Below are positions 22,405 to 57,551 of a stretch of 64,000 nt of DNA, in pieces. Made by a program: the position numbers and the translations under genes. Position 1 is the stretch's first letter. Every line of letters begins with the position of its first letter. The notes beneath the pieces are model-generated. The model ran no database searches. It had not been told where the DNA came from and saw only the letters and a list, made by a program, of their open reading frames with translations. The stretch is from positions 124,001 through 188,000 of IMG/VR virus record IMGVR_UViG_3300032268_000986; one strand, 5' to 3'.

Positions 22405-23307
22405 TTAAACCATGCGGCGCTTGATGGCACCTACCAAGGTAATTTGTTCCAACAAGGCCTTGCGGAAGTTGCGTTGAGCTTCGGTCATCTTGGCAGGGAA
22501 CTGCGCATTCACAAATGTCTTGACTCCGTTGAAGTCTTTTGCTGTTTTTGCTCGACGTACCATGTCAACGACTTTTTTCATCGCTTGTGGGCTAAATGCA
22601 GGACGTTGTGATGTCTGCGCGGTAGGCGCAGTCCAAGTTTTGTTGGCAGTCTTTTCTCGGGCAGCACGTTTGCGAATGGCATTGGGAGTCATGCTGACTT
22701 TACCGGCGACCTTGCCACCAGTTCGTTGTTTGACCGGTGTTGTGGCAGCGGCAGTAGTAGTTGCGGCAGTTTTGAGATTGGGGTTGTTGGGGTTAGAGGT
22801 ATGGCGAACTACTCCGCTGCCCACGCCCGAAACTCCTGTGGTAGTACCACCAGTGCTAGACGTAGTGGGTCTTGACGCCAACTGACTTGCCATGTTGCCA
22901 AATACACCTGCACCAGCACCTGGCTCCACAGTAGAAGTTGCAGCAGGCGCAGCAACTGAAGTAGCCCTGGTGGTAAATGCCGGGGTTGACATGTTTGGCA
23001 TGTTACTGGTTGGAACATTGTATGTTGTTGACTTGTACCCAGTAGTGGCTGCCGGTGCGCGGTTCAAGGGACGAATACCTTTGTTGGGAGTCTTGGGCAA
23101 ATACGGGGTGTTGGCAGATCCATCGGCCTTGGTCGTATCGGCCTTGGTCGTATCAGCCTTGGCTGTATCATTCCAGGTTGGTTCAACACGACCGTATGCA
23201 TCTGCACCATCGGCAAAATCATCACTGGTGTACAATTTTTTGGTGCGAGGATTGATTGACGCAGTCTGTGTGGTAATGGCTTCGTTGAATAATTCTGAAA
23301 CAATCAT
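22405..23307 (-). CDS. Low-complexity Thr/Ala-rich basic protein, putative internal head protein
   Basis: N-terminus MIVSELFNE resembles a capsid-targeting motif; largely disordered composition. Confidence 0.7.
   Translation of the reverse strand: MIVSELFNEAITTQTASINPRTKKLYTSDDFADGADAYGRVEPTWNDTAKADTTKADTTKADGSANTPYLPKTPNKGIRPLNRAPAATTGYKSTTYNVPTSNMPNMSTPAFTTRATSVAAPAATSTVEPGAGAGVFGNMASQLASRPTTSSTGGTTTGVSGVGSGVVRHTSNPNNPNLKTAATTTAAATTPVKQRTGGKVAGKVSMTPNAIRKRAAREKTANKTWTAPTAQTSQRPAFSPQAMKKVVDMVRRAKTAKDFNGVKTFVNAQFPAKMTEAQRNFRKALLEQITLVGAIKRRMV
23122..23166. repeat. 15-bp tandem repeat x3 (encodes KADTT-like units)
   Basis: atcggccttggtcgt atcggccttggtcgt atcagccttggctgt. Confidence 0.9.
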
Positions 23308-23308
23308 G

Positions 23309-24064
23309 TTATTTTTCTTCCAGGTAATCTTGGTTTTGTTGTTCTGGCTGTTGACGGCGCTGGAACAACTTTACAGCCATGTCGGCATGTGATAATTTGG
23401 GAAATCGTGTGGGCAGTTGACGTTGGCCATGACGAATTTCAAATCCTTGATCCTCATTGCCCCAGCACTCAAGCACTGTGCCATCTTCCATGGCATAGGT
23501 TTTGACCGGCTGCTGTGCAGCCACGACTGAGGTGGCCACTTGATCTTCAACATCATGTGCAACTTCACTGTCCATGGCAGAACCTTCTTCAGAGTCCCAG
23601 CCTTCTTCTACATCCTCTTCGGCTTGTTTCTGTTTCACAGCCGACTTGGCTTTGTCAATCAAATCACGGTCAACCCGAGCTTTCTTGGCCAGTTTATCTA
23701 GTTCAGGAGTTGAACGTTCACGACGGCCATCATCTCGATGGCTTATGGAATCTTCCAAACTATCCAAGTATGCATTGAGATCTTTCTTGACCTTGCTCAG
23801 CATGTCTTCTTCAACTTCTTGCATGGCTTCTTCGAGGCTGGACTTCTTGGGCTCCACTGAGTCGCCTACCATGTAACCGGCCATGGGATGTTTTTGATAG
23901 GGCTTCTTGGTCAATGTGGTAGAAATGTTCTTGGGCTTGAACAATGCCGGCAACTGAGGCACATCTCGTTGCTGTTGATTGAGTCCGTGCTTGACCGACA
24001 CCGGGGTAGTCTTACCCTCAATCAAGGCCAATCTCTCAATTATCTTGTAGATTGGATCACTCAT
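23309..24064 (-). CDS. Hypothetical protein (acidic/charged)
   Basis: Start MSDPIYK overlaps the dps stop (ATGA); contains LIE/LEE sites. Confidence 0.75.
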   Translation of the reverse strand: MSDPIYKIIERLALIEGKTTPVSVKHGLNQQQRDVPQLPALFKPKNISTTLTKKPYQKHPMAGYMVGDSVEPKKSSLEEAMQEVEEDMLSKVKKDLNAYLDSLEDSISHRDDGRRERSTPELDKLAKKARVDRDLIDKAKSAVKQKQAEEDVEEGWDSEEGSAMDSEVAHDVEDQVATSVVAAQQPVKTYAMEDGTVLECWGNEDQGFEIRHGQRQLPTRFPKLSHADMAVKLFQRRQQPEQQNQDYLEEK

Positions 24065-24501
24065 GCTCTGGCGTCTTTCAAATAACTGCGCAGTTGCCAA
24101 TGATATTTTCCGTGTTGACTCAGGCGCTGACTCACAAAGTCTGCAATGCCTTGTTGATTTTCTTGTTCAGCGTCAGCAAAGCATTGATTTAAAATTTCAA
24201 TCATCTGTTGATTGTTGGCCAGCAGTTCTTCCAGCATGAGCCTGGCACGAGGTATCTTGGTTTGTCCAGATATCTTTGTCAATTCGGCAAAACGTTCAAA
24301 ACTTCCTGGAGCATATTCATCTAGGTATCTGATGTATTCTGCGGTGGGGTCTATGGCCGAATAGGCATCTTCATAGATATTTTGAAAAAACTCATGCAAT
24401 TCACCAAAGTCAGGTCCTTCCACATTCCAATGGAACTGCTGAGCCTTTAGGTAATAGGCAAAATTACTTGCCAGGAGAGTTTTTAAAGTGTCCGCTAACA
24501 T
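24061..24501 (-). CDS. dps: Dps/ferritin-like DNA protection protein
   Basis: KAQQFHWNVEGPDFGELHEFF, D..AEYIR, HGKYHWQLRS ferroxidase-centre motifs. Confidence 0.92.
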   Translation of the reverse strand: MLADTLKTLLASNFAYYLKAQQFHWNVEGPDFGELHEFFQNIYEDAYSAIDPTAEYIRYLDEYAPGSFERFAELTKISGQTKIPRARLMLEELLANNQQMIEILNQCFADAEQENQQGIADFVSQRLSQHGKYHWQLRSYLKDARA

Positions 24502-24664
24502 TCTTGTTCCTTTTGTATTCCCGAGGCGTATTAGGCGTAGGATCAGTTGTATATTTACCATTTAGTAGAGAACCGCCTGATCTTGATACCATGCCCATGG
24601 GTTGTGCCACAGTGGCAATTGATCCTGAAGTAGTAGTCTCTGTCACAATGTCATGTACTTTCAT
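24464..24664 (-). CDS. Small hypothetical protein, putative internal head protein
   Basis: Starts MKVHDIVTE, a capsid-targeting-like motif. Confidence 0.65.
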   Translation of the reverse strand: MKVHDIVTETTTSGSIATVAQPMGMVSRSGGSLLNGKYTTDPTPNTPREYKRNKNVSGHFKNSPGK

Positions 24665-24950: not shown

Positions 24951-24955
24951 AAGAA

Positions 24956-24984
24956 TATTTAGCCAAAATCTACGTCTATAAATA
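24956..24984. promoter_or_regulatory. Divergent pair of late-promoter motifs
   Basis: TAAATA on - (24961-24956) and TATAAATA on + (24977-24984) between divergent genes. Confidence 0.65.
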
Positions 24985-30806: not shown

Positions 30807-31204
30807 GCAGTATGTATGAGGTCAAACAGTGGGCCAGCGTGAAATTCTCCTGACTGGGCCGTGATGCCTTGAGACAAATCAGCATGATTAAGTGGTACAA
30901 TATGTGTTTCCACTGGGACGTCACCCTGTAACTGCATCAAGGCCAACATGCGGTGCCGCCCATTGTGTGCAATCACTGCGGGAGGATCTTGGTTGTCAAG
31001 ATACAACACAGGATATCCAATTCCGGGATAAACCAGTCTGTGCTTGATCCAGTCAATGGTGTTCTGTTCTTGTGCGGTAAGCTCAATTGGCCGGCACAAC
31101 GATAGAAATACTGTAGGGCGCATGCTCACCAACAAACGATGCGTATCTGCAGGTAAATGAGCAGCTCCTATACCATAGTCGTTGTTGATGGTGTACGTGG
31201 TCAT
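30803..31204 (-). CDS. ParB/Srx-like domain protein
   Basis: VIAHNGRHRMLAL resembles the DGxHR motif. Confidence 0.5.
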   Translation of the reverse strand: MTTYTINNDYGIGAAHLPADTHRLLVSMRPTVFLSLCRPIELTAQEQNTIDWIKHRLVYPGIGYPVLYLDNQDPPAVIAHNGRHRMLALMQLQGDVPVETHIVPLNHADLSQGITAQSGEFHAGPLFDLIHTA

Positions 31205-32646
31205 TTGTTACGACCCGACTTCATGTTGGCGCACCAGTGATACATGCGGGCCTTCTCACCTGATGCACGTTTGGCACGGGCACGTAGGTCAGTAACTGAT
31301 CCGTCGCAGCTGGCACCTGCCCGTTTCACACGGCCCGGGCGACTCTTGCCTTGGACTTTGCCGTCTGCAAAGTTTTCATTCAAGCCATTTAATTCTTGTT
31401 CACCTTGAGGTGTTAGAAACCAGAACCCGTCACCTGGTGTAACAATCAAGCCGGCATTTTCTAAACTGTCGTATACATTTTGTTGTGCATCAGTTATACC
31501 ACGTATGTCTTGTTGAAAATCCAATCCATGGTTGTTGGCTACATCAATTGCTTTCATTAATAGTAATTTACCGTAACCTTGTCCTTGCCAGCGTGATTCA
31601 ACTTCTGCTTCATTGTTGACGTCATCTGTGTCAGCACTGCGTACAAAATTGAAATACCCTACATGTTTTCCATGCACTGCTAGTGTGATTTGAAAACTGT
31701 GTTTATATCCGTCAGGTGAAGTGACTGTGAATTTTACAGGGTTTCCGCCATCTGCAAAGTTTTCTGCCACAGCTGGTTGTACTCTACTCAATTCATATAT
31801 AACTAAATCGCCAGTGTCTGCACGAAAAGCTCTATAACCCCAGGCCCGAGCATAACGTTGAACCAGTCTGTCATACAACTTGGCACGACTTTCAGGATTT
31901 GGTTGAGGCTGGTCAGGCTCATAATATATTGTTGGGTCAGTTGCTTTACTGGCTGAAAAACTCAATCTTGAAGGTTTGTATTTTTTAATGTACTTTTGTA
32001 TGGAAGCCAACACTGTGGCAAAGATTCTCTGGGCATCGCCTTCGCCAGTGACTTCTTGACTGTTGTTTCTATAAAATTCAACCTGCACTATTTCTTTGCC
32101 CTCGTCATCTTGTTGATTGTTGAACATGATGCTTAAATTTGTTCCGTCGGGCAATTTGGCCAACATATCAACATCACCATACTCACTTTTTTCTGATTTG
32201 GTTTTGTAGGGGTTGTTGAAAGCTTCTGGCACAGGTTCCCAGGCCATGTTTTTACTGCCCTTGACCGCAGGCCGGAATCCCTGTGATCGATAGAACTTCA
32301 TCAGTTTGCTTTGACTGACTTGGCCCTTGTCCCAGGGGTATAATGTGAGTGCAATGTTATCTTCTTGTGCCAGACGTTGCAGTTCCCGCATGGCACGTGA
32401 TCCAACTCCGGCACGCAGGGGATAGGCCTGGAACCATTTGACTTCCACTGCGTCACGTTTGCTGTTGCTGGGTGTGAGTTCAAACATGGCAAACTGTTGA
32501 TCCTCGCCTGAACCGCCCATGGGCATGACATGATTGTTTTGCCAGGTCTGTGGATATGCTGCATAGACTTTTTGAATCCAGTCATATGCTCGTTGCTGTG
32601 GACTCAGCTTGATTGTGTTGTCAACAATGAATTCCTGTGCTCTCAT
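31201..32646 (-). CDS. Modular protein with two GNAT acetyltransferase-like domains and a basic C-terminal module
   Basis: MRAQEF start; AGVGSRAM..KFYRSQGF (GNAT 1); VESRWQGQGYGKLLL (GNAT 2); duplicated ENFADG. Confidence 0.75.
   Translation of the reverse strand: MRAQEFIVDNTIKLSPQQRAYDWIQKVYAAYPQTWQNNHVMPMGGSGEDQQFAMFELTPSNSKRDAVEVKWFQAYPLRAGVGSRAMRELQRLAQEDNIALTLYPWDKGQVSQSKLMKFYRSQGFRPAVKGSKNMAWEPVPEAFNNPYKTKSEKSEYGDVDMLAKLPDGTNLSIMFNNQQDDEGKEIVQVEFYRNNSQEVTGEGDAQRIFATVLASIQKYIKKYKPSRLSFSASKATDPTIYYEPDQPQPNPESRAKLYDRLVQRYARAWGYRAFRADTGDLVIYELSRVQPAVAENFADGGNPVKFTVTSPDGYKHSFQITLAVHGKHVGYFNFVRSADTDDVNNEAEVESRWQGQGYGKLLLMKAIDVANNHGLDFQQDIRGITDAQQNVYDSLENAGLIVTPGDGFWFLTPQGEQELNGLNENFADGKVQGKSRPGRVKRAGASCDGSVTDLRARAKRASGEKARMYHWCANMKSGRNK
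31364..31764. repeat. 14-bp direct repeat TCTGCAAAGTTTTC flanking the second GNAT module
   Basis: Exact copies at 31364-31377 and 31751-31764. Confidence 0.9.
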
Positions 32647-32650
32647 AAAA

Positions 32651-35600
32651 CTATTTAACTACGCCTTCGTCTAGCTCGTCTTCGGTCATGATTGGCACAA
32701 CAGACATTTCTGTGCCGTATGCATAACCGTTGTTCTGCATCCACTGAGTGGCCACACGATTTGCATCACGTTGCTGATTACCAATACCTGAGAATCTATA
32801 CAACTCATTACCATCAGCATCTAGAATCTGCCAAGCACCGGAGAATGTGCCCGGAGTGGCTCGTTGCTGTGCCAAGGCTGCTGTGCTTCCAGGGTAGACC
32901 ACCTCTATATCTGGTTCAATGTCAATGATACCATTTTGAGAAGAATCTTGACCAGTCTGACGAGTTCTCACTTCAAACTCATTGGGATTGTGTCCGTTTT
33001 GGCTTAGCCAAGTTCGTGCTTCGGATTCTGCATTGCGTCGGTACGTGCTGGGCGGGTTGAAGTAAACTTGATTGTTGCTTCTGCTGGCCACTTCCCAGGG
33101 CCCAGGACCGGTGGGTCTCAGCGGGTTAGTATCTGTCTGAGTGTTGGTCACACCGGGGCCACGCCGCATGCCAAATGTTCTTATAGCATCCTGAGTGTTC
33201 AATCTATGCGGCCCGTGCGCACGATAATCATCTAGGCGAATCTGAGCTTCGTCATCGTTGCGTAGCTGTGCAGTGTCAACTACCGCACCAGTTTCTCTAT
33301 TGTAGATTTCGTAATCAACACTGGTGTCCACACCTTGTGGCTCTGGTGCAGCAGGTTCAATCTCTTGAACTGTTAATTCAAGATCATTTCCAGGGTTCCT
33401 TATGTTGTAATCCTGTATCCAGGCTCGAGCAGCGGCCTGGTCTCTAAATCGTCTAGTCACAGACTCGCCGTCAACATTCATTGTTGCAAAGCGATCAAGC
33501 ACTGCTACCCAAATACCCCAATTGCCAGTTGGTGTGCTGTCTTGTTCTTCAGCTGGGCGAATGGGCTGAGCCTGCCAGCCTTTGTCTCTAAACCATTCTT
33601 GTTCAGTGGCACCGCCGGTGTTCAAATTCCATTGTTGTCGGGCTTGTTGCATGGCTTCAAATTTACTAGAAGCAATGACCTCTATGCCTTGACTTTGATA
33701 TGGAGAATCACTTGCACCAGTGACCTTCCATACAAATGGTCTATCCAAACTTTTATTATCAACAGGCTCTTCATACGGACGCACTGGCTTGGCCACAACT
33801 GATTGTCTGGTGTTGGCCCAGCTGGGATAGCCATCTGCACCCAAGGCTTTTTCAATGGCTTCTTCTTTAGTGGTGGCAACAACTTCTATACCGGCTAGAC
33901 TTTGCGGGGGATTTGTCACGCTCCACCACATTTTTTTACCGCTAGTCGCGCCGCGTTTGACCTGTCGTGTCAGCTGAGCCTGCTTGACAAAACTGCGCAG
34001 GGCTGCCTTGGGAATCTTGCCGGCTACGTATTCGGAAAAATATCTTATAGTGTCAGCGTCATCCTTGTTGTTTTCAGTCAACAGCTTGTACAGCTTCTTG
34101 AGGTATTCTTCTCTGTATGCTGCAGGATTCAAGGCAGCACTCATGGCCACTGTGAATCGCAACAGGGTGTTTTCAATTTGATCAAAGTTTTCGTCCAGCC
34201 AGTCGCCACCAGGTGAGCGGAATTCAATGTGCCCGTCCTTGGTATTGATTGATGTGTACTTGCTGGTCACACCCGAGTGTATGGCCTTGGAAGCCAGGCT
34301 GTCCAAGTTGCCTTTCATTTTTTCCAGCAGTTGTTGAGCCGAGTCTGGATCGTTGCGCACCTTGCCCTTGACCATGTCCAGGGCAGACTTGGCATAGGTG
34401 TTGCCAGCTCGGCCAAACAGATCCAGCACATATTTGTCGCCCATCAGCAGGGCCAGTTTTACAAAGTCCAGATTCTCTCTGCTGTAGCCCGGCACTGAAA
34501 TATTGATGTGCAGGCCTGTGGAGTCATTGGTATAGCAGCCATATTCCTTGGCCCAGGCCTTGACCTTGTTCAAGTCGCTGAGTATTTCGTCAATGGGCAA
34601 GGGCGGGCTCACAAACTCCAGGCCAGTGTCGCCAGGATTATCGCCATCCAAGCTGCCGTCTGGTTCCACAATATAGTGTTGTGATGTTGGGCTAGGACGC
34701 GGTACTCGTCCTGAATGATAGCTGCCACTGGCCTTGGTGTCACGACCAATGGCGTTTTCAAACTCCTGTGCCACATCTTCAATGCTGGCTTCGCCACCGC
34801 CTACAGTGGTCCAGTACGGCCAAGAAATCTCATAGGCATTTTCTACACCGCTCATGCGATCCAAGTCTTCGGCATCCAGCCAGTCGCTTTCGTCGTAACT
34901 TTCAAAATTTTCTTCACGGAACTCTTCAAAAGCATCACTACTGCCGGGGTCGATATGCAGGTTGGCAATGTATACCTCTAGTGCTTCCTCACGAGCTTCG
35001 CCCTCCAAGCCGTCGGGATTCCACTCAGATTCGTCTACATTGTTGGGCACCCATTCTTCTAGGAATTCTTCGCCACTGCGTTCCCAGTCTCGATAGAGTT
35101 TGTCATCCAGCCATTCCTGGAAATCATTCTGCATTCTTTCACGCAGGCGTTCTACTTCTCTACGACCATTGTAGTCACCATCATGGAAGAAGGCCACAGC
35201 ATCATCAATGCTGCGGCAGCGTTCGTCTTGGTCATAGTCTGGCTCCAGATCACCGTCATCATCGTTTTCGGTGTTGGGCACAATCATTTCAAATTCCATG
35301 CCGGCAATGGCGCCGGTACGGGCAGCTTCCTGCCGCAGGCTTGACGGACTCATGTTGATCTCACCCAGGAACTCATCTTCCAACAAGGCAAATTCCCAAT
35401 GTAGGTCATTGGCAAGCTCTTCACGCAGGTTGGCAGTCTTCATCAACAGTGCCGGGCGGCCTTGACTGTCAGTGTCCAAGGCCAGCTTGTTGGCTTCTCG
35501 GCCCACTTGTCCAGGCTTGATATCCACAGTCAAGGCCATGCTGTAGCGCGGGTCACGTGCTTCTTTTTTGTTTCGGGGAATGTAGCCCGATGCACTTTCT

Positions 35601-36772
35601 TTGATGGGTGCATCATCAAACTGTTCAGGATGTGCGACGGCCCAGTCACGCATGATAATGCCGGCTCTAGCATTGGCATCGTTTTCCCAGCGTGATCCAG
35701 TTTCTCCTGCGTCTGCAGGCAAGGGGCGAGTCTGATGCTGGGCGCAGTGTACCAGTTCATGTGCCACGGTACGCAGTACATCCAGTATGTGTCGATTTGT
35801 CAAGCTCACATTCAGCGTGTGTGCTTCAGGATCGTAGCGACCAAAGCTGTGATTGCTGGTGCCCCAGTCAGGGTCAGTGTGCAACACCACACGTGGTAAA
35901 GGATCAATATCTAACCGGTTGGCCACATGTTGTATAAAATCATTGATAGTGTCTGGATCCAAGTCATCTTCACAGAACATCTTGGTACTGGGGCTGACAC
36001 CGTCGGGCGTGGATCCTGCATCTTCAGCAAAGCCATAACGGAAACGCTGACGCGGCTTGTTTTGTTCACGCAGACTCAGCTCATGATCACGAGCAGCAGT
36101 TCTAGCATCACGCAAGGCCTTGATGCAGCCCTTGGTTCTTAGAATTTTAAAAACAATGTTTTCGCAGCCAAACTCACCATGCTGGTCCAGCCCACTCTGG
36201 CGCATGTTTCTAATCTTGTCCCATAGCCGGCCCATGGCATCTGCATCACCCGACTGAATGGCGCTGTGAATGCGAGCGTCTAGGTCTTCTACCTTGGCTC
36301 GCACACAGGTGTCATCAATACGAGCACGTTTTTTACGTGGTACTTGTATCCAACGGTCATTCATGACCGAGTATTCGCCTTGGCTTACCGGAGCTTCGGC
36401 AGCATTTTGCACATAGAGTTCAACTGGTATCTTGCCAATGGACAATGTGTGTTCGTCATTGTACTGATATTTCTTGGCGTTGAACAGTTCTTGATACACA
36501 TCATCCTGGCTGGGAAAATCCACCACAAGATGTAGATCAATATCTGACTGCGGAGTATAACTGAAAGCAGCATTGCTGCCGCTCACAGTTATGTCTTTTA
36601 CCTGTAGGTCAGATACACCTAGAAACTCCCGAAAATCAGCAGCAATTTCCAGGAGTTTGTCACGTACCTCGGGCAACATGTTTTCATCTCGTGCCCAAAT
36701 CACAGGATTGAGACGATTGTGAAATTTTACTGCGTCGGTTAATTTAAAAGAATCCAGCTCATGAATGTTCAT
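32651..36772 (-). CDS. 1373-aa multidomain protein: Pol-beta-like nucleotidyltransferase, HExxH module, amidoligase-like domain, C-terminal repeats
   Basis: SGSNA..SDIDLH; AHELVH; GMEFE, EPDGSL, GLEFVSPP, STGLHINIS, KYTSIN, IEFRSPGG. Confidence 0.8.
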   Translation of the reverse strand: MNIHELDSFKLTDAVKFHNRLNPVIWARDENMLPEVRDKLLEIAADFREFLGVSDLQVKDITVSGSNAAFSYTPQSDIDLHLVVDFPSQDDVYQELFNAKKYQYNDEHTLSIGKIPVELYVQNAAEAPVSQGEYSVMNDRWIQVPRKKRARIDDTCVRAKVEDLDARIHSAIQSGDADAMGRLWDKIRNMRQSGLDQHGEFGCENIVFKILRTKGCIKALRDARTAARDHELSLREQNKPRQRFRYGFAEDAGSTPDGVSPSTKMFCEDDLDPDTINDFIQHVANRLDIDPLPRVVLHTDPDWGTSNHSFGRYDPEAHTLNVSLTNRHILDVLRTVAHELVHCAQHQTRPLPADAGETGSRWENDANARAGIIMRDWAVAHPEQFDDAPIKESASGYIPRNKKEARDPRYSMALTVDIKPGQVGREANKLALDTDSQGRPALLMKTANLREELANDLHWEFALLEDEFLGEINMSPSSLRQEAARTGAIAGMEFEMIVPNTENDDDGDLEPDYDQDERCRSIDDAVAFFHDGDYNGRREVERLRERMQNDFQEWLDDKLYRDWERSGEEFLEEWVPNNVDESEWNPDGLEGEAREEALEVYIANLHIDPGSSDAFEEFREENFESYDESDWLDAEDLDRMSGVENAYEISWPYWTTVGGGEASIEDVAQEFENAIGRDTKASGSYHSGRVPRPSPTSQHYIVEPDGSLDGDNPGDTGLEFVSPPLPIDEILSDLNKVKAWAKEYGCYTNDSTGLHINISVPGYSRENLDFVKLALLMGDKYVLDLFGRAGNTYAKSALDMVKGKVRNDPDSAQQLLEKMKGNLDSLASKAIHSGVTSKYTSINTKDGHIEFRSPGGDWLDENFDQIENTLLRFTVAMSAALNPAAYREEYLKKLYKLLTENNKDDADTIRYFSEYVAGKIPKAALRSFVKQAQLTRQVKRGATSGKKMWWSVTNPPQSLAGIEVVATTKEEAIEKALGADGYPSWANTRQSVVAKPVRPYEEPVDNKSLDRPFVWKVTGASDSPYQSQGIEVIASSKFEAMQQARQQWNLNTGGATEQEWFRDKGWQAQPIRPAEEQDSTPTGNWGIWVAVLDRFATMNVDGESVTRRFRDQAAARAWIQDYNIRNPGNDLELTVQEIEPAAPEPQGVDTSVDYEIYNRETGAVVDTAQLRNDDEAQIRLDDYRAHGPHRLNTQDAIRTFGMRRGPGVTNTQTDTNPLRPTGPGPWEVASRSNNQVYFNPPSTYRRNAESEARTWLSQNGHNPNEFEVRTRQTGQDSSQNGIIDIEPDIEVVYPGSTAALAQQRATPGTFSGAWQILDADGNELYRFSGIGNQQRDANRVATQWMQNNGYAYGTEMSVVPIMTEDELDEGVVK

Positions 36773-37783: not shown

Positions 37784-38362
37784 CTATTTGACGCCAATGA
37801 TCATGAAACGAGTATATGCAGTTTCAGGATCTTCAAGAGATAGGCTGCCTGAATACAATATCTGACTCAAGGGAAATTGTTGTTGAATATCTTTTGCACT
37901 GAAAAACGGGTTCTCTTCCACATGGTCACGTGCCTGCATGGCCACTAGTGTTCCCGGAGGAATATTCTGAAACCAGTCACTGCCCGCTATGTCGGTCAGG
38001 CTCAGATTGATCACACTGCCTTGGCCGTCCAGTTGTTGGTAGTCAAGACCATTGGCGTCTTTGCGCATGTGTTCAACGCCCTGATATCCCAGTTGATCCA
38101 GCATGGTTTTACCTGTGAACAAACGTTCACTGTTGGTTTCTACATTGATTATCTTGTCTACCTCCAGGGCAGACTGGCGTCTTATCAGCAGAGCCAGGTT
38201 ACTGTACCAAGACCCCAGCACATACATCACAGAAACATAATCGGTAATCTTGGACAACTCCTGGATCAACCACAACTTGCTGAATACCAGGTCTGGTGTA
38301 AAACTACCACTGAAGCTGTAGCCTGAGCTTTCGGCCAGGCCCACTACATCTTCCACAATCAT
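37784..38362 (-). CDS. Class I methyltransferase-like protein with capsid-targeting-like N-terminus
   Basis: VMYVLGSWYS (motif I variant), INVE, TRFMIIG; begins MIVEDVVGLAE. Confidence 0.6.
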   Translation of the reverse strand: MIVEDVVGLAESSGYSFSGSFTPDLVFSKLWLIQELSKITDYVSVMYVLGSWYSNLALLIRRQSALEVDKIINVETNSERLFTGKTMLDQLGYQGVEHMRKDANGLDYQQLDGQGSVINLSLTDIAGSDWFQNIPPGTLVAMQARDHVEENPFFSAKDIQQQFPLSQILYSGSLSLEDPETAYTRFMIIGVK

Positions 38363-39918
38363 TTTTTACGACCCTGACAGTGAGCTCGCTGACTGAATCC
38401 CCGGGGACTGGCGCAGTTGATTGAACTTTTGTATTTTTGACTCCACTTTTCATCAATGTAGTCTTCGTCCACGGGCTGATTTTCTCTACGTTGATAGCTG
38501 GCAGTCATGCCACCCACAAAGTTTTGTGCATCAACTTCGGTCATGTCAGGCTTGTCCATCAGGGGACCACCTGTGACCCAGGCATCGCAGGTTCTGCGAC
38601 TGGCACATTTGAACTTTAGAAACTTGCAGTATCCCAGGTCGCCGGCGTCAATCACACCTTCTGCATCTGCAGGCGAGTCAGCATCAATACCTTGCGCAAT
38701 GCAGTCCAAGGTGTCTTGGCGTATGTCAAATGCCGCACAGTTGCCGCACAGGCTTTGTTTTGCTTCTTCTGCACTGTCAAGATTCCACTCGTCAACTTTT
38801 TTCATCCAGAACTTGCGGTTGGACATGTCTGGGTTGAGTGGGCCATATCCGTATTCGTCAATGGCTTTTTGTCTGTTCTTGAGATTCAGTGTGATGTCCT
38901 GTGTGGCAGGCGGACACTTCTTTTCAGCCTCCGCCACACCTTGTGATTCAAAATTATCTATATTTCTAGAAACTCTACGCTCACTGCCTTGAGCAGGGAA
39001 TCCTGAACTTTGTGATTGCGGCGCAGGTCTTCCTGGGGCATACTTAGATAACTTTTCAGTGGCTTTTTCTCTAGCAATAGTCATCCACATTTGTTGTTGT
39101 CTGCGATCAATAGGCTGGCCACGTGTGGCAACTATTTGTTCATAGATTGCTCGTGCCATTTCCTCTATGTCTTTATTGTGTTGCACACGAGGATCATCTT
39201 GACGCATGTTTTGGAATTCTCTTGAAACATCAACAGGACGTGATTGTGCTATTGCAGATCCAGCTGCACCTGCCACAGCCGCCGCACCTAGTCCACGTAA
39301 GAATCCTCTACGGCTCAAGTCTTCGTCAAGTTCACCGCCAATGGCTGTGTCCAACAGTTTGACAACCGTGGCAGCTAGTCGGGGATTGGTTTGTGTCTTG
39401 GGATACAAGCTCATTACCAGAGCTGTTTTGCGTTGATCATTTAACCGGGGCCAGGCAGCGCGAATTTCTGTGGCCGATGTCATTCCGGGACCAAATTCCA
39501 CAGTGGGCAAGTAGGCCATGTAGGCATGCCGGGCAAATGGTTCTAGTCGGCGAGCACCCATGAGTGGTTGCAGGTATGCAGGTGATCCGTCTTTTTTTAC
39601 ACCACCGGCCTGGGGTGGTTTGTTGGCGTCTTTTTCACTGCGTACAAAGATCAGTCGATCCTGTGCAGGGTCAAATTGAGCAGTGATTTCCTCGGCACGA
39701 AATGGTGATTTGACCTGCACAAAATGTCCAGGCTCAACTCCAGCCAACTTGGCCAGTTTTTCTTTTACAGCAAATGGAAATGGTCTAGCCGATGTGTCAT
39801 TTGTGGCTGCCACAAATACTTTGGCGTCGGGAAATGCTCTGCGGGCAGAGTTGTAAAGGGCTGCATGGCCAGCATGAAAAGGGTGAAACCCACCCGGTAT
39901 AATAACAACGGTAGTCAT
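38359..39918 (-). CDS. Modular protein: HxGH nucleotidyltransferase-like domain, internal Tat-signal module, Cys-rich module, basic C-terminal peptide
   Basis: GGFHPFHAGH; LDE-DLSRRGFLRGLGAAAVAGAAGSAIA; SQGVAE; CGNC...CKFLKFKC..C; KWSQKYKSSINC. Confidence 0.8.
   Translation of the reverse strand: MTTVVIIPGGFHPFHAGHAALYNSARRAFPDAKVFVAATNDTSARPFPFAVKEKLAKLAGVEPGHFVQVKSPFRAEEITAQFDPAQDRLIFVRSEKDANKPPQAGGVKKDGSPAYLQPLMGARRLEPFARHAYMAYLPTVEFGPGMTSATEIRAAWPRLNDQRKTALVMSLYPKTQTNPRLAATVVKLLDTAIGGELDEDLSRRGFLRGLGAAAVAGAAGSAIAQSRPVDVSREFQNMRQDDPRVQHNKDIEEMARAIYEQIVATRGQPIDRRQQQMWMTIAREKATEKLSKYAPGRPAPQSQSSGFPAQGSERRVSRNIDNFESQGVAEAEKKCPPATQDITLNLKNRQKAIDEYGYGPLNPDMSNRKFWMKKVDEWNLDSAEEAKQSLCGNCAAFDIRQDTLDCIAQGIDADSPADAEGVIDAGDLGYCKFLKFKCASRRTCDAWVTGGPLMDKPDMTEVDAQNFVGGMTASYQRRENQPVDEDYIDEKWSQKYKSSINCASPRGFSQRAHCQGRKK
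38928..38942. repeat. GVAE cassette-boundary repeat (variant copy)
   Basis: CCTCCGCCACACCTT shares 13 nt with the 16-mer at 49493, 55816, 56608 and 57217. Confidence 0.8.
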
Positions 39919-44228: not shown

Positions 44229-44234
44229 AGAAAA

Positions 44235-48597: not shown

Positions 48598-49713
48598 TCA
48601 GCAGTTCCACTTGCGCAGTGCCAGAGCCTTGCGAGTGGGTTTACCATTGGGCTTTTTCATGGGGCCTTTGACGCCGCCCATTCTGGCACAAAATGATTTT
48701 CTGCGCTTGGCTGCTTTGGAACCTGGCTTGAGTTTTGAAGGCTTGGTGGTCACTGCCATTTGCAGTTTGCTACCGGGATTCTCTCTGCGATAGCTGGCCA
48801 CACCCTTGGCATTGAGTCCGCCCTTTTTGCTCTTGCCTTCTTTTCTGCGCCAGGCAGCAGTTTCATACAGCACGTTGTCTGGCAGGGCTTCAAACTGTTC
48901 CCATACTAGATCTTTACTCACACGATTTTTCACTGCCATTTCTTCGGCCAGTTGATCCATGGCTTCAAACATCTCATCCACTTCAGGATCCACTTCGTCC
49001 GACGCTTCTTCAGAGTACATGTAGTCCCACACTGCGACCAGCATGCTCTTGGCCACAGCAATCTTTTCCTGGCACCATTCAGGCAAGTTGTCGCCTGAGT
49101 CAATCAAGTCGTCGATACCTCGAACAGCACGATCCAGGGTTTCTAGATTGTTGTCGGCCATGCCGGCTTCGTCGTCATACTCGGGATTGTAGTTTTCTGG
49201 CATGGTTTGTTCACCAAAACGTTGACGATAGCTGTTGGGGTTCATTGACGATCTGGTCCCGACCACAGCATTGCCTTCGCCACTTAATAACAAATCATAC
49301 ATGAGTTTGATTACTTTTAAGGGGCTATTCATTCTTTCCAGGGCGTTTTTAAACCATTCAACTTTTTCTGGTTTCATTGGCTTGGAACTGGGCTTGCTGA
49401 TCAGCGCCAGGGCCTGAGCCTTTAGCGTGGACAAGTCTCTGATTTGTTCAAGACGTTTTAAATCCTCAATATCAAAGTTGTAATCGGCTTTGCCTTCCGC
49501 CACACCTTCTGACTTGTTGCCATAGTTGCCAGCGCCTTTTTTGCGGCACTGAACCAGGCGTCCTGATGCATAGGCTGACGGCCATACTTTTGCACTAGAC
49601 TTGACCTTGTAGTAACAGGCGTCTTTCTTTTCCATCATCAGCATTTCGCTGAACATGGGGCCACCACAGTGTGGGCATGACTGTTTGGATTCAACCAAGT
49701 CTTTGAATTTCAT
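48598..49713 (-). CDS. Modular putative internal head polyprotein (basic Cys-containing modules)
   Basis: MKFKDLVE start; DACYYKVK..WPSAYASG; SEGVAEG; DNLPEWCQEKI; C-terminal KKGGLNAKG..RRKSFCARM. Confidence 0.78.
   Translation of the reverse strand: MKFKDLVESKQSCPHCGGPMFSEMLMMEKKDACYYKVKSSAKVWPSAYASGRLVQCRKKGAGNYGNKSEGVAEGKADYNFDIEDLKRLEQIRDLSTLKAQALALISKPSSKPMKPEKVEWFKNALERMNSPLKVIKLMYDLLLSGEGNAVVGTRSSMNPNSYRQRFGEQTMPENYNPEYDDEAGMADNNLETLDRAVRGIDDLIDSGDNLPEWCQEKIAVAKSMLVAVWDYMYSEEASDEVDPEVDEMFEAMDQLAEEMAVKNRVSKDLVWEQFEALPDNVLYETAAWRRKEGKSKKGGLNAKGVASYRRENPGSKLQMAVTTKPSKLKPGSKAAKRRKSFCARMGGVKGPMKKPNGKPTRKALALRKWNC
49493..49508. repeat. GVAEG cassette-boundary 16-mer
   Basis: CCTTCCGCCACACCTT exact copy. 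Confidence 0.9.
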
Positions 49714-50273
49714 TTGCGTTTTCCTTTGGTACTTACATTTATGGCTGCGCCTGATCGATTGGCATTGGGATCTTCTCGGCGCTTTCTTGCGGCTGCACTG
49801 GCACGACCCTTTTTGCCCAGGGCATGTGCCTTGGCCTGTGGCAAACACTTGGGCTTGCCTTCTTTGCTACTGCCTCTGGCACAGTCTCCACGTATTTTGC
49901 CGTCGGGTCCAAAACGAACCCATTTTTGTTTGAACCAGTCACGTAGATTTTCTTCCAGCTCTTGTGTGGACATTTTCTTTTCATATCCCTGCACAGAGGT
50001 GGTCTTGTCGGGGTCAGGCGCACCTTGCAATTTGGCAGCTGGCAAAAACTTCCGTATACTCTGCAGGGTCAGCGGACCCATCACGCCATCCACATCCAGG
50101 TTGGCACGGTACTGTTGATTCAGCATCTGTTGTATTCTGCGAACTTGATCTGACGTCATGTCTTGTTCTTCACTCACAGGCACACAATTGGGTACCATTC
50201 GGGAACCTTTTTTCTTCATGCCTTGACGACGATATCCGGTCCAGCAGGCTTCCAATATTTCTCTATATCTCAT
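49710..50273 (-). CDS. Modular putative internal head protein with a peptidoglycan-binding-like module
   Basis: MRYREILE; ACWTGY..VPNCVP; IQQMLN..LDVDGVMGPLT (PG-binding pattern); LEE-NLRDWFKQKW..KPKCLP. Confidence 0.75.
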   Translation of the reverse strand: MRYREILEACWTGYRRQGMKKKGSRMVPNCVPVSEEQDMTSDQVRRIQQMLNQQYRANLDVDGVMGPLTLQSIRKFLPAAKLQGAPDPDKTTSVQGYEKKMSTQELEENLRDWFKQKWVRFGPDGKIRGDCARGSSKEGKPKCLPQAKAHALGKKGRASAAARKRREDPNANRSGAAINVSTKGKRK

Positions 50274-50911: not shown

Positions 50912-50938
50912 ACTGCTATTTAGTTGTCTATTATAGAA

Positions 50939-55020: not shown

Positions 55021-55653
55021 TCAGCGCCCGGCCACTGCCAAGGCAGCACCGTTGTTGAAACTCTGACTGTGCGACTGCGCCTGACGCAGACCCTTGCGCT
55101 TTGACCACTCATATCCAGCACGATGGCCCGAGCAGTCCTTGGTACAGGGCGAGCCTAGGAACGACAGCTCTTGCAAGTGTTCGGCTGACTCGCCCAGTTC
55201 AATTTCCGGGGTCACGCTCTGAAACGTGCGATCCATCACAGCAGTCTTGAACTGAAACTCTGAGGTTTGTTCGTTGTTGCGGCGTAGGCCAATGCTGAGT
55301 CCAGTATCGGGATCACGCACCCAGACCTTGCTGGCAGCTGGCATGCGCATGAGCTGATCCTGGATGCTGGGCAGTCGGCGCAGAGCTTGATCCACAATGC
55401 CAGGATCTATTTCACGAAAATACACCTGTTCAATGGCATGGCTGTCTACGTCAATGGTCAAGTCGCCAATGTGTAAGTGTCCTTGTGATGTTTCTGCTAT
55501 GTGTGATTTTGATTCACCGCCTCCATCACCGCCACCTTCGCCAGAATCTTCACTGCCGTAGTAGGCATACCCTGGGAAAAAATATCCACCATAACGACTG
55601 GATTTTTTCCCACGACGTTTTTTGCGCTCGGTGACAAACTCTTGGGCTCTCAT
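55021..55653 (-). CDS. Modular putative internal head protein
   Basis: MRAQEFVTE start; basic/Gly-rich segment; IAE and LQE sites; C-terminal PCTKDCSGHRAGY. Confidence 0.75.
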   Translation of the reverse strand: MRAQEFVTERKKRRGKKSSRYGGYFFPGYAYYGSEDSGEGGGDGGGESKSHIAETSQGHLHIGDLTIDVDSHAIEQVYFREIDPGIVDQALRRLPSIQDQLMRMPAASKVWVRDPDTGLSIGLRRNNEQTSEFQFKTAVMDRTFQSVTPEIELGESAEHLQELSFLGSPCTKDCSGHRAGYEWSKRKGLRQAQSHSQSFNNGAALAVAGR

Positions 55654-57551
55654 TTTTTTGGTGGTTGCACTGCTGTGGGCACGTTACGGTACACACGTTT
55701 TTGTGGGTCGTACACTGTTTTAAGTGGGCCCATGCCTGCCAGTTTCTTTACTCTGGCCACCATGTCTTGATAGTCGTCACCGTAGTCGGCTTCGGGTGGC
55801 TCAGACTTCCGGTTGCCTTCCGCCACACCTTGTGATACGCTTTCAAACTCTGGCTTTTTATTTGAAGAAAGTCTATCTAATTTTTCAATAGTGCTACCTG
55901 CATTTCTAAAAAACTGTGCTGATTCTTTTTGGTATAATTCTGGATTATTTTTTAATACTTCTACACTTTGCTTTGCCTTAGGGTAGATGCTATTAACATA
56001 ATCTTTAGCATTGTTTGCATCAATAAACCTCTTAATAGATGCGGCAACTGCTTTAAATAAATCACTATTATCTAACTGTCTATCTTTACAAATTGCGTAT
56101 ACTATTAAAGCATCTATTAGGACATCAAATTCTTCTTTACCAAGATTGCCCATTGCAGATTTTTGTTGTTGTTGAGATTGGAGTGCAGAATTATATTTTT
56201 GATACGCTTCGCTTATACCTGCTCTATACGCATTTAAAAAATCCTGATAACGATTTTTCATATTAGTTAGAAACGCTGACACTAACTTATTCTCTTTATC
56301 TAACCCGGATGCCTCATATGCTTGTTGATTGCAAGTATCAATCACATTTTTTGCATTATATGAATTTGTTTGTCTACAATAGTCAGAGACCCAATTACCA
56401 ACATTAGTGACTAACCAATTTCTTAAATCATATCCTGTGTCCTGGTGAATACGACCCATTGTTCTTGTGGCCAAATCTGTAGCATATTTTGTCCATTGCG
56501 TAACTTCCTGAGCGTCTGCTTTTGTTGCAACACCACCGGCTGCACCTGTCACAGCCGCCGCACCCAAGCCCTTTAGGAATCCTCTACGGTCTATTTCTTC
56601 TAATGAGCCTTCCGCCACACCTTCTTGCATATTGTTTAACAATTCCTGCGCTTTTTCAATGCTGATCATGTATCTACCAAAGCGGTTAGGGTCTGCAGCC
56701 TTTTGTAGATATTCTTTGCTAAAGCCCTGTGGTCCGCTTGGTGAATCTATTCTAGCAGGAGCTGTGACTTGTTGCTTGCCATTTGCTCTGGCCTGTAGTT
56801 CTGCCTTGGCATCAGCAACACTGACCATTGGGCGAGGGTGTTCACCTGAAGCAACTTGTTGTAGATATTGTGTATTATAATTACTCAAGTCTGCCGCCTG
56901 AGCATGACCCATACCACCACCCATTGCCATGGCACCTGCTAATGCAGCTGAGCCCAATGCGCTTTTCCACCCTTCAGTTAAATCAGTTACACCAAAACCA
57001 ATATAGCTGTCACCGTGTTCGTCGCCTGATCGAACAACAAATGCGCCGCCCTCTTCACTTTCAATTTCACCAATTTCCCAACCTTGGCGAGCTAGAGCTT
57101 GTTCAACTTGTTGTTGTACAGCATCATCACCATTGTACCACATACGAGCGTACTTGTGTAGTGTATCTTCTTCACCACTGTCACCGCCATCACCTGGCGC
57201 AAATTCATTCAACGAGCCTTCCGCCACACCTTGGCTTTCACTGACTTCGGCAGCGGTCAGGTACACAGTCCAGGTCTTGCCCGAACTGGCGGATTTCCGT
57301 TCAGCCCACTGCTTCATGTTTTCAAGATTGCTGCGCTCTTCTGCACTGTCTGCTGTGCCACGGCCGGCAACCACTTTCCATGGTCTGCCATTGATGGCAA
57401 TTTGTATATTGTTGCGCTCGTGTGCCAGTTCTTGACGTAGGCCACGATGGTCATCGCCACGGCCCATGCCGCTCACACTGCTGTCGTAGTCACGCTGATA
57501 AGCATCACGACGGTCAAAGCGACTTTCTTGTGTTATTTGACTGACTTTCAT
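55650..57551 (-). CDS. 633-aa modular polyprotein with three GVAEG boundaries and internal Sec- and Tat-type signal peptides
   Basis: MKVSQITQE; QGVAEGSLNE; LTE-GWKSALGSAALAGAMAMGGGMGHAQA; EGVAEGSLEE-IDRRGFLKGLGAAAVTGAAGGVATKADA; QGVAEG. Confidence 0.8.
   Translation of the reverse strand: MKVSQITQESRFDRRDAYQRDYDSSVSGMGRGDDHRGLRQELAHERNNIQIAINGRPWKVVAGRGTADSAEERSNLENMKQWAERKSASSGKTWTVYLTAAEVSESQGVAEGSLNEFAPGDGGDSGEEDTLHKYARMWYNGDDAVQQQVEQALARQGWEIGEIESEEGGAFVVRSGDEHGDSYIGFGVTDLTEGWKSALGSAALAGAMAMGGGMGHAQAADLSNYNTQYLQQVASGEHPRPMVSVADAKAELQARANGKQQVTAPARIDSPSGPQGFSKEYLQKAADPNRFGRYMISIEKAQELLNNMQEGVAEGSLEEIDRRGFLKGLGAAAVTGAAGGVATKADAQEVTQWTKYATDLATRTMGRIHQDTGYDLRNWLVTNVGNWVSDYCRQTNSYNAKNVIDTCNQQAYEASGLDKENKLVSAFLTNMKNRYQDFLNAYRAGISEAYQKYNSALQSQQQQKSAMGNLGKEEFDVLIDALIVYAICKDRQLDNSDLFKAVAASIKRFIDANNAKDYVNSIYPKAKQSVEVLKNNPELYQKESAQFFRNAGSTIEKLDRLSSNKKPEFESVSQGVAEGNRKSEPPEADYGDDYQDMVARVKKLAGMGPLKTVYDPQKRVYRNVPTAVQPPKK
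55816..57232. repeat. Three exact copies of the GVAEG 16-mer
   Basis: CCTTCCGCCACACCTT at 55816, 56608 and 57217. Confidence 0.92.

What the first reader, a model, noticed from the sequence alone, without database searches (positions are those of the whole stretch)
22405..57551. A family of genes sharing a T4-like capsid-targeting N-terminus and internal hydrophobic-x-E sites
Seen: at least nine otherwise unrelated ORFs begin M-x-x-x-(E/D/Q)-hydrophobic, most followed by a nearby E: MIVSELFNE (23307), MKVHDIVTE (24664), MRAQEFIVD (32646), MNIHELDS (36772), MIVEDVVGLAE (38362), MKFKDLVE (49713), MRYREILE (50273), MRAQEFVTE (55653), MKVSQITQE (57551). Their internal domain boundaries fall at VAE, LNE, LEE, LDE, LTE, IDE, IAE, LQE and LYE. 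Established: T4 IPII/IPIII start MKTYQEFIAE, a capsid-targeting sequence removed by gp21. Inference: this phage packages many multi-domain polyproteins into the head, releases them as separate modules and injects them as a pre-made host-takeover kit that includes enzymes (GNATs, nucleotidyltransferases, amidoligase, methyltransferase).
Basis: partly seen in the sequence, partly recalled or inferred. Interest (0 to 1): 0.8.

Follow-up and report, generated by a model that had tools for sequence, protein, structure and literature searches.

The report
Capsid-targeting tags on jumbo-phage polyproteins
An uncultured 343-kb phage carries a cluster of unrelated, often multi-enzyme proteins that start with a short tag resembling phage T4's capsid-targeting signal and are split into modules by the matching protease-cut motif, which points to a kit of proteins packed into the capsid, some carrying hidden export signals.

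Summary
The window is part of a 342,865-bp metagenomic jumbo-phage contig, distantly T4-like, with Sinorhizobium phage Phosso as nearest cultured relative.

- **Tag.** Eight of the nine listed N-termini (all but 36772) belong to one signal class, M-[RK]-x-x-[ED]-[FIL]-[ILV]-x-E. T4 IPII and IPIII start MKTYQEFIAE. In related contigs the strict form heads 13 of 236 genes. It occurs at none of about 22,000 internal Met positions. It sits on at least 12 unrelated protein bodies.
- **Module boundaries.** The tag's last three residues, hydrophobic-x-Glu, also precede 163 of 167 recurring module starts, against a 1.85% background. They fall in the AlphaFold linkers of two window proteins. This is the T4 gp21 cleavage motif.
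- **New here.** Every Tat signal (33 of 33) and every Sec-like signal (41 of 41) in these proteins is internal and directly follows such a site.
- **Protease.** A gp21-type protease (PF03420) lies on a clade contig that also carries the clade DNA polymerase. I did not reach one in the 136 kb I read of the window's own contig.

Packaging, cleavage and injection are inferred, not shown. This is a new variant of known kinds: T4 capsid-targeted internal proteins and polyvalent proteins.

The parts
22405..23307 (-). Protein A, 300 aa, low-complexity and basic. Tag MIVSELFNE at 23281-23307.
   Evidence: Sequence read. It matches the tag pattern. No orthologs covering the N-terminus were found, so membership rests on the pattern only.
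24464..24664 (-). Protein B, 66 aa. Tag MKVHDIVTE at 24638-24664.
   Evidence: Seven orthologs carry interchangeable tags, including MRAQEFITE and MRANEFILE.
31201..32646 (-). Protein C, 481 aa. Tag MRAQEFIVD at 32620-32646 with Asp at the cut position. It has four modules joined at VPE141 (32224-32226), VAE295 (31762-31764) and LNE424 (31375-31377): a GNAT-like module, a DUF6934-like module, a GNAT module and a basic C-terminal 'NFADG' module.
   Evidence: Pfam GNAT hits are above cut-off. AlphaFold low-pLDDT linkers at 126-141, 291-301 and 423-437 coincide with the three sites. Foldseek matches tandem GNAT proteins. More than 4,282 mosaic homologs exist.
32651..36772 (-). Protein D, 1373 aa, polyvalent-type: nucleotidyltransferase-like N-terminus, HELVH motif at aa 338-342, amidoligase at aa 663-804, and further modules. 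It has no tag. Internal junction candidates are FAE250 and IKE.
   Evidence: Pfam Amidoligase_2 scores 27 bits above cut-off; NTP_transf_2 scores 19.6 bits, just below. The N-terminus is conserved across orthologs. Orthologs run on through a GVAEG junction to the NFADG module, whereas the window has a stop followed by tagged gene C.
37784..38362 (-). Protein E, 192 aa. 11-residue tag MIVEDVVGLAE at 38330-38362. Its start overlaps the stop of the upstream gene.
   Evidence: Orthologs start MRIQDLINE and MKIFDLLAE, followed by the same SSG..GSFT body. No family hit, so the methyltransferase claim is untested.
38359..39918 (-). 519-aa protein without a tag. Cytidylyltransferase-like N-domain, then LDE199 (39322-39324), then an internal Tat signal at aa 201-229 (39232-39318), then QGVAE330 (38929-38931), then a Cys-rich module.
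   Evidence: CTP_transf_like scores 22.2 bits. TIGR01409 scores 23.2 bits against a cut-off of 16.7. Context read.
48598..49713 (-). Protein F, 371 aa. Tag MKFKDLVE at 49690-49713, Zn-ribbon module, GVAE73 (49495-49497), DUF6321 C-terminus.
   Evidence: JGI calls the same start. Orthologs carry MIINDLFEE, MIIDDLFE and similar tags. The same CPHCGG module occurs internally after hydrophobic-x-E in L020 and L252. DUF6321 E = 1.4e-21.
49710..50273 (-). Protein G, 187 aa. Tag MRYREILE at 50250-50273. Weak peptidoglycan-binding hit.
   Evidence: Five orthologs conserve MRY[RK]EILE. In L021 the same module follows an internal QLDE. PG_binding_1 scores 20.8 bits, below cut-off.
55021..55653 (-). Protein H, 210 aa. 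Canonical tag MRAQEFVTE at 55627-55653. Its C-terminus holds a CTKDCSGHRAGY motif. The start overlaps the stop of gene I.
   Evidence: A small tagged protein with the same Cys motif lies directly after the major capsid gene in contig L052, which belongs to another phage group.
55650..57551 (-). Protein I, 633 aa polyprotein. Tag MKVSQITQE at 57525-57551. Three GVAE sites: E111 at 57219-57221, E314 at 56610-56612, E578 at 55818-55820. LTE193 is followed by a Sec-like signal at about 56886-56972. LEE319 is followed by a Tat signal at aa 320-347 (56511-56594).
   Evidence: TIGR01409, 20.3 bits; all three GVAEG motifs lie in low-pLDDT linkers.
57548..58682 (-). Two genes for homologs of virion structural proteins. 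They lie directly upstream of I and overlap its start.
   Evidence: phrog_13138 and phrog_12928, 'virion structural protein'. The best cultured match is a PA5oct protein annotated 'structural protein' or 'virion structural protein' in the PA5oct records.

Best explanation
The 9-residue N-terminal tag is this clade's version of the T4 capsid-targeting sequence. It would dock the protein onto the scaffolding core of the assembling prohead. Its last three residues, hydrophobic-x-Glu, are the cut site of the gp21-type prohead protease. Many passengers are polyproteins, so one tag carries several modules into the head, and the protease cuts them apart at identical sites such as QGVAE|G, VAE|NFADG and LEE|IDRR. 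The released modules are enzymes (GNAT, amidoligase, nucleotidyltransferase), basic modules whose role I have not tested, and modules whose new N-terminus is a Sec or Tat signal. They would be ejected with the DNA and act in the next host, some after export to the periplasm.

Shown: the tag, its independence from the protein body, the junction rule, the linker positions, the hidden export signals, the gene context, and a gp21 homolog in the clade.

Inferred: docking, cleavage by that particular protease, packaging, ejection and export.
For: 1. Tag resemblance to T4. The tag M-[RK]-x-x-E-F-[ILV]-x-E resembles T4 IPII/IPIII MKTYQEFIAE and Alt MELITELFDE. One homolog starts MRAQEFIAE. Tag positions F, I/V and E align with T4 IPIII residues 7, 8 and 10, which matter for targeting and processing. 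T4 gp21 cuts after L/I-x-E (PMC9026906).
2. The tag is independent of the protein body. It sits on at least 12 unrelated families. It heads 48 of 106 C-like and 19 of 115 I-like database proteins predicted in other public assemblies. Codons vary synonymously.
3. The same module follows either a tag or an internal hydrophobic-x-E. This holds for AFDQPY (53 of 53), NFADG (69 of 73), the Zn-ribbon module and the CW-GYR module.
4. The sites lie in AlphaFold linkers.
5. Tat signals (33 of 33) and Sec-like signals (41 of 41) are never N-terminal and always directly follow such a site, so they are useless without cleavage.
6. Genes I and H overlap start-to-stop with upstream homologs of virion structural proteins. 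A protein with H's Cys motif follows the capsid gene in L052.
7. PA5oct gp333, detected in virions by mass spectrometry and encoded between portal and protease, starts MKINDIITE.
8. Contig IMGVR_UViG_3300027754_003437 carries both a DNA polymerase 81% identical to the window's and a PF03420-type protease with His85 and Ser140 conserved.
Against: - No proteomic or cleavage data exist for any member.
- The protease was not found in the 136 kb I read of the window's own contig.
- Export signals fit processing in the producing cell's cytoplasm just as well.
- The preferred P3 residue is Val, whereas T4 prefers Leu or Ile.
- Protein C and some B orthologs have Asp at the cut position. In T4, Asp there blocks processing.
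- The clade's own gp67-position protein starts MILNEFFKKE, without an exact hydrophobic-x-E.
- D (1373 aa) and the 519-aa protein have junctions but no tag.
- Tagged genes lie far from the head-gene module. On the linking clade contig the protease is about 125 kb from the polymerase.
Confidence: 0.6

Rival explanations
1. Cytoplasmic polyprotein processing. A Glu-specific protease cuts the precursors in the infected cell, outside the capsid. It could be a free form of the gp21 homolog, the HExxH domain of D, or another enzyme. The N-terminal tag would then be a propeptide or protease-docking element. Released modules act in the producing cell, and those with Sec or Tat signals go to its periplasm, for example for superinfection exclusion or envelope remodelling.
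For: - Every Sec-like and Tat signal is unmasked only by cleavage.
- The tagged genes lie away from the head module.
- D carries an HELVH motif.
- Polyvalent proteins with their own peptidase domains are known (PMC5512222).
Against: - The tag resembles the T4 capsid-targeting sequence at its functionally mapped positions.
- Small single-module proteins carry the tag too, with nothing to separate.
- Separate genes would achieve the same result without a polyprotein, whereas one tag for many passengers explains the fusion.
- No MPTase-type peptidase family hit was found in D.
- I and H are coupled to virion structural gene homologs.
Confidence: 0.22
2. No cleavage occurs. Hydrophobic-x-E with QGVAEG is only a conserved flexible linker or recombination joint that eases domain shuffling. 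The N-terminal tag is a conserved translation-start context or a short interaction helix.
For: - Modules are shuffled extensively at exactly these joints.
- The sites lie in predicted linkers.
Against: - Codons at tag and joint vary synonymously, so conservation is not at the DNA level.
- Only P1 Glu and a hydrophobic P3 are fixed while P2 and P4 vary, which is a protease-site signature.
- Internal Sec and Tat signals cannot work unless they are exposed.
- The same rule applies at residue 9 of the N-terminal tag.
Confidence: 0.1
3. Chance, or ordinary family conservation of N-termini.
For:
- Two look-alike N-termini, D and the gene at 15811-16755, are family-conserved and not tags.
Against: - The strict tag is absent from about 22,300 internal Met positions and nearly absent from about 1,660 control genes. 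It sits on at least 12 unrelated bodies.
- 163 of 167 module starts obey the junction rule, against a 1.85% background.
Confidence: 0.02

Closest known systems
T4 internal proteins IPI, IPII, IPIII and Alt, with their capsid-targeting sequence and gp21 processing
   Same: A short N-terminal propeptide is shared by otherwise unrelated proteins. It has an E-F-[IV]-x-E core and ends in the hydrophobic-x-Glu protease site. The set of passengers is highly variable, and the protease family is PF03420.
   Different: - The tag is 9 residues rather than 10, and P3 is mostly Val.
- The passengers include large mosaic multi-enzyme polyproteins cut at many internal sites into separate modules.
- Some modules carry Sec or Tat signals.
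- The genes are clustered between the DNA polymerase and tail or structural genes.
- Nothing has been shown experimentally.
Polyvalent proteins of phages and conjugative elements (Iyer et al. 2017, PMC5512222)
   Same: Mosaic proteins that string together GNAT, nucleotidyltransferase, NUDIX, deaminase, ParB and lysozyme- or chitinase-type domains. They are predicted to be packaged and injected, and their domains are shuffled rapidly.
   Different: No MuF, portal or MPTase anchor domain was detected here. Delivery would rest on a T4-type tag, and separation on prohead-protease sites between modules rather than on a built-in peptidase. I found no mention of such tags or joints in that paper or in the 2021 jumbo-phage survey.
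Ejection and inner-body proteins of phiKZ, 201phi2-1 and SPN3US, processed by a diverged gp21 homolog
   Same: Many head-internal proteins of giant phages are cut after Glu at a three-residue motif and ejected into the host (PMC9026906).
   Different: The motif there is S/A-x-E, and cleavage mostly removes propeptides. No shared N-terminal tag and no export signals behind the sites are described. The phage lineage is different.
Viral polyproteins, for example picornavirus 3C cutting after Gln or Glu
   Same: One translation product is cut at short conserved sites in linkers into functional units.
   Different: Those are RNA-virus replication strategies. Here the polyprotein would serve co-delivery into a capsid. 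This comparison rests on my own knowledge and was not tested.

Membership tests
T4-type capsid-targeted internal head proteins | A short N-terminal sequence shared by otherwise unrelated proteins | tested here: met
   The strict tag heads 13 of 236 clade genes and 0 of about 22,300 internal Met positions. It sits on at least 12 body families.
T4-type capsid-targeted internal head proteins | The tag ends in the prohead-protease site (L/I-x-E in T4) | tested here: met
   Seven of the eight accepted window tags end in hydrophobic-x-E or hydrophobic-hydrophobic-E. C ends in Asp. In 64 database tags, position 9 is Glu (fixed by the selection pattern to E/D/Q) and position 7 is I, L, V or F in 59.
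T4-type capsid-targeted internal head proteins | The genome encodes a gp21-family (PF03420) prohead protease | tested here: inconclusive
   Not present in the 136 kb read from the window's contig. Present on clade contig IMGVR_UViG_3300027754_003437 together with a DNA polymerase 81% identical to the window's. Pfam PF03420 is assigned to the matching proteins. His85 and Ser140 are conserved.
T4-type capsid-targeted internal head proteins | Present in the virion in processed form and ejected with the DNA | not testable with these tools
   The only indirect support is that PA5oct gp333, which starts MKINDIITE, is flagged as detected by ESI-MS/MS.
Polyvalent proteins (Iyer 2017) | Two or more effector-type domains in one polypeptide with mosaic, fast-shuffling architectures | tested here: met
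   C has GNAT-fold modules plus DUF6934. D has nucleotidyltransferase, HExxH and amidoligase. More than 4,282 homologs combine NUDIX, deaminase, ParB, SET, chitinase and other domains.
Polyvalent proteins (Iyer 2017) | Virion-linked anchor or peptidase domain (MuF, portal, MPTase) | tested here: not met
   No such Pfam hit in C, D, I or the 519-aa protein. D has only a bare HELVH motif.
Tat-exported proteins | Twin-arginine signal: RRxFLK, a hydrophobic stretch and an AxA site | tested here: met
   TIGR01409 scores above its cut-off in I (20.3 bits), the 519-aa protein (23.2 bits) and the L005 ORF (24.8 bits).
Tat-exported proteins | The signal lies at the N-terminus of the translated protein | tested here: not met
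   All 33 contexts are internal or lie behind the 9-residue tag. Each is preceded by hydrophobic-x-E. They could qualify only after cleavage.

The most novel reading that the evidence does not exclude
One tag, many passengers. A very abundant group of jumbo phages loads its capsid with polyproteins via a T4-like tag. The prohead protease then dismantles them into modules, and cleavage unmasks Sec and Tat signals. Pre-made phage proteins injected into a new host would then be re-exported by the host's own translocons into the periplasm within moments of infection. No such injected-then-exported route came up in the papers I read or searched.
Probability: 0.3. Interest if true: 0.9.

Novelty: new variant of a known kind. 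Interest (0 to 1): 0.8.

Why it matters
- **Scope.** It would extend the T4 capsid-targeting principle, known from a few small T-even proteins, to thousands of mosaic multi-enzyme proteins. The clade is common in metagenomes: more than 600 polymerase-bearing contigs in IMG/VR and more than 4,000 homologs of one passenger.
- **Annotation.** It gives a simple sequence rule, the tag plus hydrophobic-x-E joints, for predicting which genes of unknown function encode injected proteins and where their functional units begin and end.
- **Biology.** It raises a testable new idea: protease-unmasked export signals on virion-delivered proteins.
- **Engineering.** The tag-and-joint grammar could help in loading cargo into large phage capsids.

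Tried and rejected
**Searching for the window's own protease**
- tblastn with T4, Erwinia phage pEa_SNUABM_47 and Phosso head proteins found nothing in the window or nearby loci.
- Scans of viral contigs with a gp21 alignment and with Phosso gp21 returned other lineages.
- I walked the JGI contig from 78 to 214 kb and found no head genes.
- Exact look-ups of two clade gp67-like variants hit other contigs.
- From the linking contig I expect the protease near contig position 15 kb. I did not fetch that region.

**Other leads that went nowhere**
- The 328-kb contigs (L038, L052, L190) are not the window's clade. L038, the one listed, has 40% GC and tetranucleotide r = 0.44.
- An apparent 1138-aa link between L074 and the contig was false.
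- Cultured phages have no homologs of C, D or I.
- The syntenic Phosso region lacks tags.
- I stopped the PA5oct-wide test of tag against virion proteome after 68 kb. Only one tagged gene turned up, gp333, which is detected by mass spectrometry.

**Rejected as tags**
- D's N-terminus and the gene at 15811-16755 are family-conserved starts.

**Promoter-like motif**
- CTAAATA upstream of some cluster genes did not help link loci.

**Literature**
- A search for the motif strings found nothing relevant.

Full report
**What the window is.** The window is positions 124,004-188,003 of JGI contig 3300032268 Ga0335242_1176572, also held as IMGVR_UViG_3300032268_000986 (342,865 bp). Almost all genes are on the minus strand.
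- Its DNA polymerase is 50% identical to that of Sinorhizobium phage Phosso, 46% to Agrobacterium phage Atu_ph07 and about 43% to Rak2/121Q-type jumbo phages.
- Gene order from Clp ATPase through DNA polymerase to QueE matches Phosso.
- The clade is very common in IMG/VR. More than 600 stretches matched the polymerase patterns, and the 80 loci listed are at least 80% identical to it.

**The N-termini.**
It heads 12 of 68 window genes, against about 10% of gene starts in control phage loci and 4.7% of internal Met.
- The strict form M-[RK]-x-x-E-F-[ILV]-x-E is decisive. It heads 13 of 236 genes in loci related to gene I, none of about 22,300 internal Met positions, and 0-1 of about 800 genes in each of two control sets.
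- Tagged proteins fall into at least 12 families with unrelated bodies.
- Within a single orthologous family the tag drifts among MKVHDIVTE, MKLHEIMED, MRAHEIMED, MRANEFILE and MRAQEFITE. The looser window tags therefore belong to the same class.
- Orthologs also support the tags of E, F and G.
- Codons for the tag vary synonymously, so the peptide is what is conserved.
- Among database homologs predicted in other public assemblies, 48 of 106 C-like and 19 of 115 I-like proteins begin with the strict tag. One begins MRAQEFIAE.
- Two look-alikes are not tags. D's MNIHELDSF is the conserved start of its nucleotidyltransferase domain. The gene beside the polymerase (15811-16755) has a family-conserved start without the terminal Glu.
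- In the 136 kb of the contig that I read, tags occur only between window 23,307 and 57,551.

**Resemblance to T4.**
- Read from the T4 record, IPII and IPIII start MKTYQEFIAE, IPI starts MKTFKEF and Alt starts MELITELFDE.
- A review of the T4 work (PMC9026906) states four relevant points. The first 10 residues of IPIII suffice for capsid targeting. Residues 4 and 7 matter most for targeting, and 8 and 10 for processing. Asp at position 10 blocks processing but not targeting. gp21 cuts after L/I-x-E.
- Aligned from the C-terminal end, the clade tag's invariant F, I/V and E match T4 residues 7, 8 and 10.
- Protein C's tag ends in Asp.

**Internal sites.**
- QGVAE[GA] occurs five times and ENFADG twice in the window.
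- These motifs appear dozens of times in related loci. They are at chance level in about 1.5 Mb of loci from other lineages.
- In 240 database homologs of C and I, recurring module starts are preceded by Glu at -1 and a hydrophobic residue at -3. The counts are 53 of 53 for AFDQPY-type, 69 of 73 for NFADG and 41 of 41 for a Sec-like signal. The per-position background is 1.85%.
- The same module follows either an N-terminal tag or an internal site. For example, MRANEFITE|AFDQPY and ...KQQVAE|AFDQPY both occur. The Zn-ribbon module of F and the CW-GYR module of G behave the same way.
- Where relatives have a GVAEG joint after D's last module, the window has a stop codon and then gene C with its own tag.
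- The AlphaFold model of C has four confident domains. Its low-confidence linkers at 126-141, 291-301 and 423-437 correspond to VPE141, VAE295 and LNE424.
- In the model of I, all three GVAEG motifs lie in linkers.
- Over both proteins, 10 of 16 hydrophobic-x-E sites lie in or next to linkers that hold 18% of residues (Fisher p = 7.6e-5).

**Hidden export signals.**
- TIGR01409 (Tat signal) scores above its cut-off at residues 320-347 of I and 201-229 of the 519-aa protein. In a related ORF it scores at residues 11-41, directly behind the tag MRAQEFVNE.
- All 7 distinct Tat contexts in clade loci and all 26 in database homologs are internal, and all are preceded by hydrophobic-x-E within 1-6 residues of the twin arginines. 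Examples are VAE|DLSRR, LDE|DLSRR and LEE|IDRR.
- A second module, GWK followed by an Ala/Gly/Leu-rich stretch and AQA, looks like a Sec signal. It follows hydrophobic-x-E in every context found: 48 by eye and 41 of 41 by count.
- Protein I holds one of each, after LTE193 and after LEE319. An internal signal peptide is useless unless it is exposed, so this is independent evidence that the sites are cut.

**Context.**
- I and H overlap start-to-stop with each other and with two upstream genes that match PHROG families of virion structural proteins. The best cultured match is a PA5oct structural protein.
- In PA5oct, the 73-aa protein between portal and protease is flagged as detected by ESI-MS/MS and starts MKINDIITE.
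- Small proteins at that position in many metagenomic relatives start MRYLEILKE, MKAKDLLVE and similar. Phosso gene 328, right after its protease, starts MRASELFEF.
- In contig L052, which belongs to another phage group, a tagged protein with H's Cys motif follows the capsid gene.
- C's homologs number more than 4,282. They combine GNAT with NUDIX, deaminase, ParB, SET, chitinase, nucleotidyltransferase and amidoligase domains. This is the polyvalent-protein pattern of Iyer et al. (PMC5512222).

**The protease.**
- I did not find a protease gene in the window or in contig positions 78-214 kb.
- Cultured relatives of this supergroup that were listed, including Phosso at 240,509-241,132, have a gp21 homolog.
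- Tetranucleotide similarity singled out a group of protease loci as likely clade members.
- Searching with one of them returned contig IMGVR_UViG_3300027754_003437, with the protease at about 146 kb. The same contig carries a DNA polymerase 81% identical to the window's at about 20 kb.
- Matching head modules carry Pfam T4_baseplate, Portal_T4, Peptidase_S77 and Gp23.
- The clade protease keeps His85 and Ser140 in T4 numbering. That these are the catalytic residues is from my own knowledge.
- The clade capsid protein has YLKE|NASAGST where T4 gp23 has FLTE|AEIGG. The alignment is by eye, and that T4 gp23 is cut at that position is from my own knowledge.

**Mechanism and rivals.**
- Best reading, about 0.6: the tag is a capsid-targeting propeptide and hydrophobic-x-Glu is the prohead-protease site. 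One tag carries a string of modules into the prohead, where they are cut apart and later ejected with the DNA.
- Main rival, about 0.2: the same cleavage happens in the cytoplasm and serves export from the producing cell.
- Weaker rival, about 0.1: the motifs are linkers or recombination joints that are never cut. The hidden signals and the protease-like fixation of P1 and P3 argue against it.
- Chance is excluded.

**Novelty.** Capsid-targeting sequences and polyvalent proteins are each known. Three things are new here: their combination, the junction grammar, and the protease-unmasked Sec and Tat signals. I found no mention of them in the papers I read or in a full-text search for the motif strings.

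Noticed in passing
window 24951-24957, 32647-32653, 36773-36779, 39919-39925, about 40465-40471, 50912-50918 (minus strand): [CT]TAAATA lies exactly 5 nt (once 7 nt) upstream of the ATG of six genes, all inside the tagged-gene cluster. It resembles the T4 late promoter TATAAATA but is so close to the start codon that transcripts would be leaderless or nearly so.
   Followed up: partly
window 131-15051 and contig 114-124 kb (L276): A large cluster suggests 7-deazaguanine-type DNA modification and sugar chemistry: QueE-like, GTP cyclohydrolase I, two PTPS genes, B12-binding radical SAM, epimerases and an aminotransferase.
   Followed up: no
window 23309-24064 (minus strand): The gene between A and B really starts at an internal ATG, giving MSDPIYKIIE.
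   Followed up: partly
window 31204-31374 and the C-termini of D orthologs (L003, L005, L010, L016): A basic module of about 57 aa, starting NFADG and ending ...HW.ANMK.GR..., terminates many otherwise different proteins. It may be a distant relative of DUF6321. I did not test what it does.
   Followed up: partly
window 41107-44249: The phage encodes a 772-aa Clp-family ATPase (phrog_4871) next to a gene whose product starts like a DnaJ J-domain. Phosso has both at the syntenic place, annotated as a Clp-family ATPase and a DnaJ-like chaperonin.
   Followed up: no
window 53247-54209; L278 13132-14433: Host-like tricarboxylate transporter parts are encoded: TctC with a signal peptide, and TctA elsewhere on the contig.
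   Followed up: no
L004/L201 and L007/L205 compared with window 19-57 kb: In some clade contigs the I homolog lies within about 10-20 kb of the DNA polymerase, against 38 kb in the window. The tagged-gene cluster is therefore a hypervariable region of the genome.
   Followed up: partly
L072, L333, L024, L023 (protease N-termini): The proteases themselves begin with a hydrophobic-x-E: MKTLRE in the clade, MSMLRE in Erwinia phage pEa_SNUABM_47 and MNEPQLLIE in T4. A T4 review suggests LIE-9 as an autocleavage site.
   Followed up: no
window 20547-21848: The N-terminus looks like that of S-adenosylhomocysteine hydrolase. This is my reading of the sequence only; I ran no family search.
   Followed up: no
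contig 196-214 kb (L282, L283): A Peptidase_S8 gene sits among very large proteins of 1043, 1138, 858 and 1150 aa, one with a Gly_rich_2 domain. They are probably tail fibres. This is a second phage protease that I did not examine as a candidate for the cleavages.
   Followed up: no
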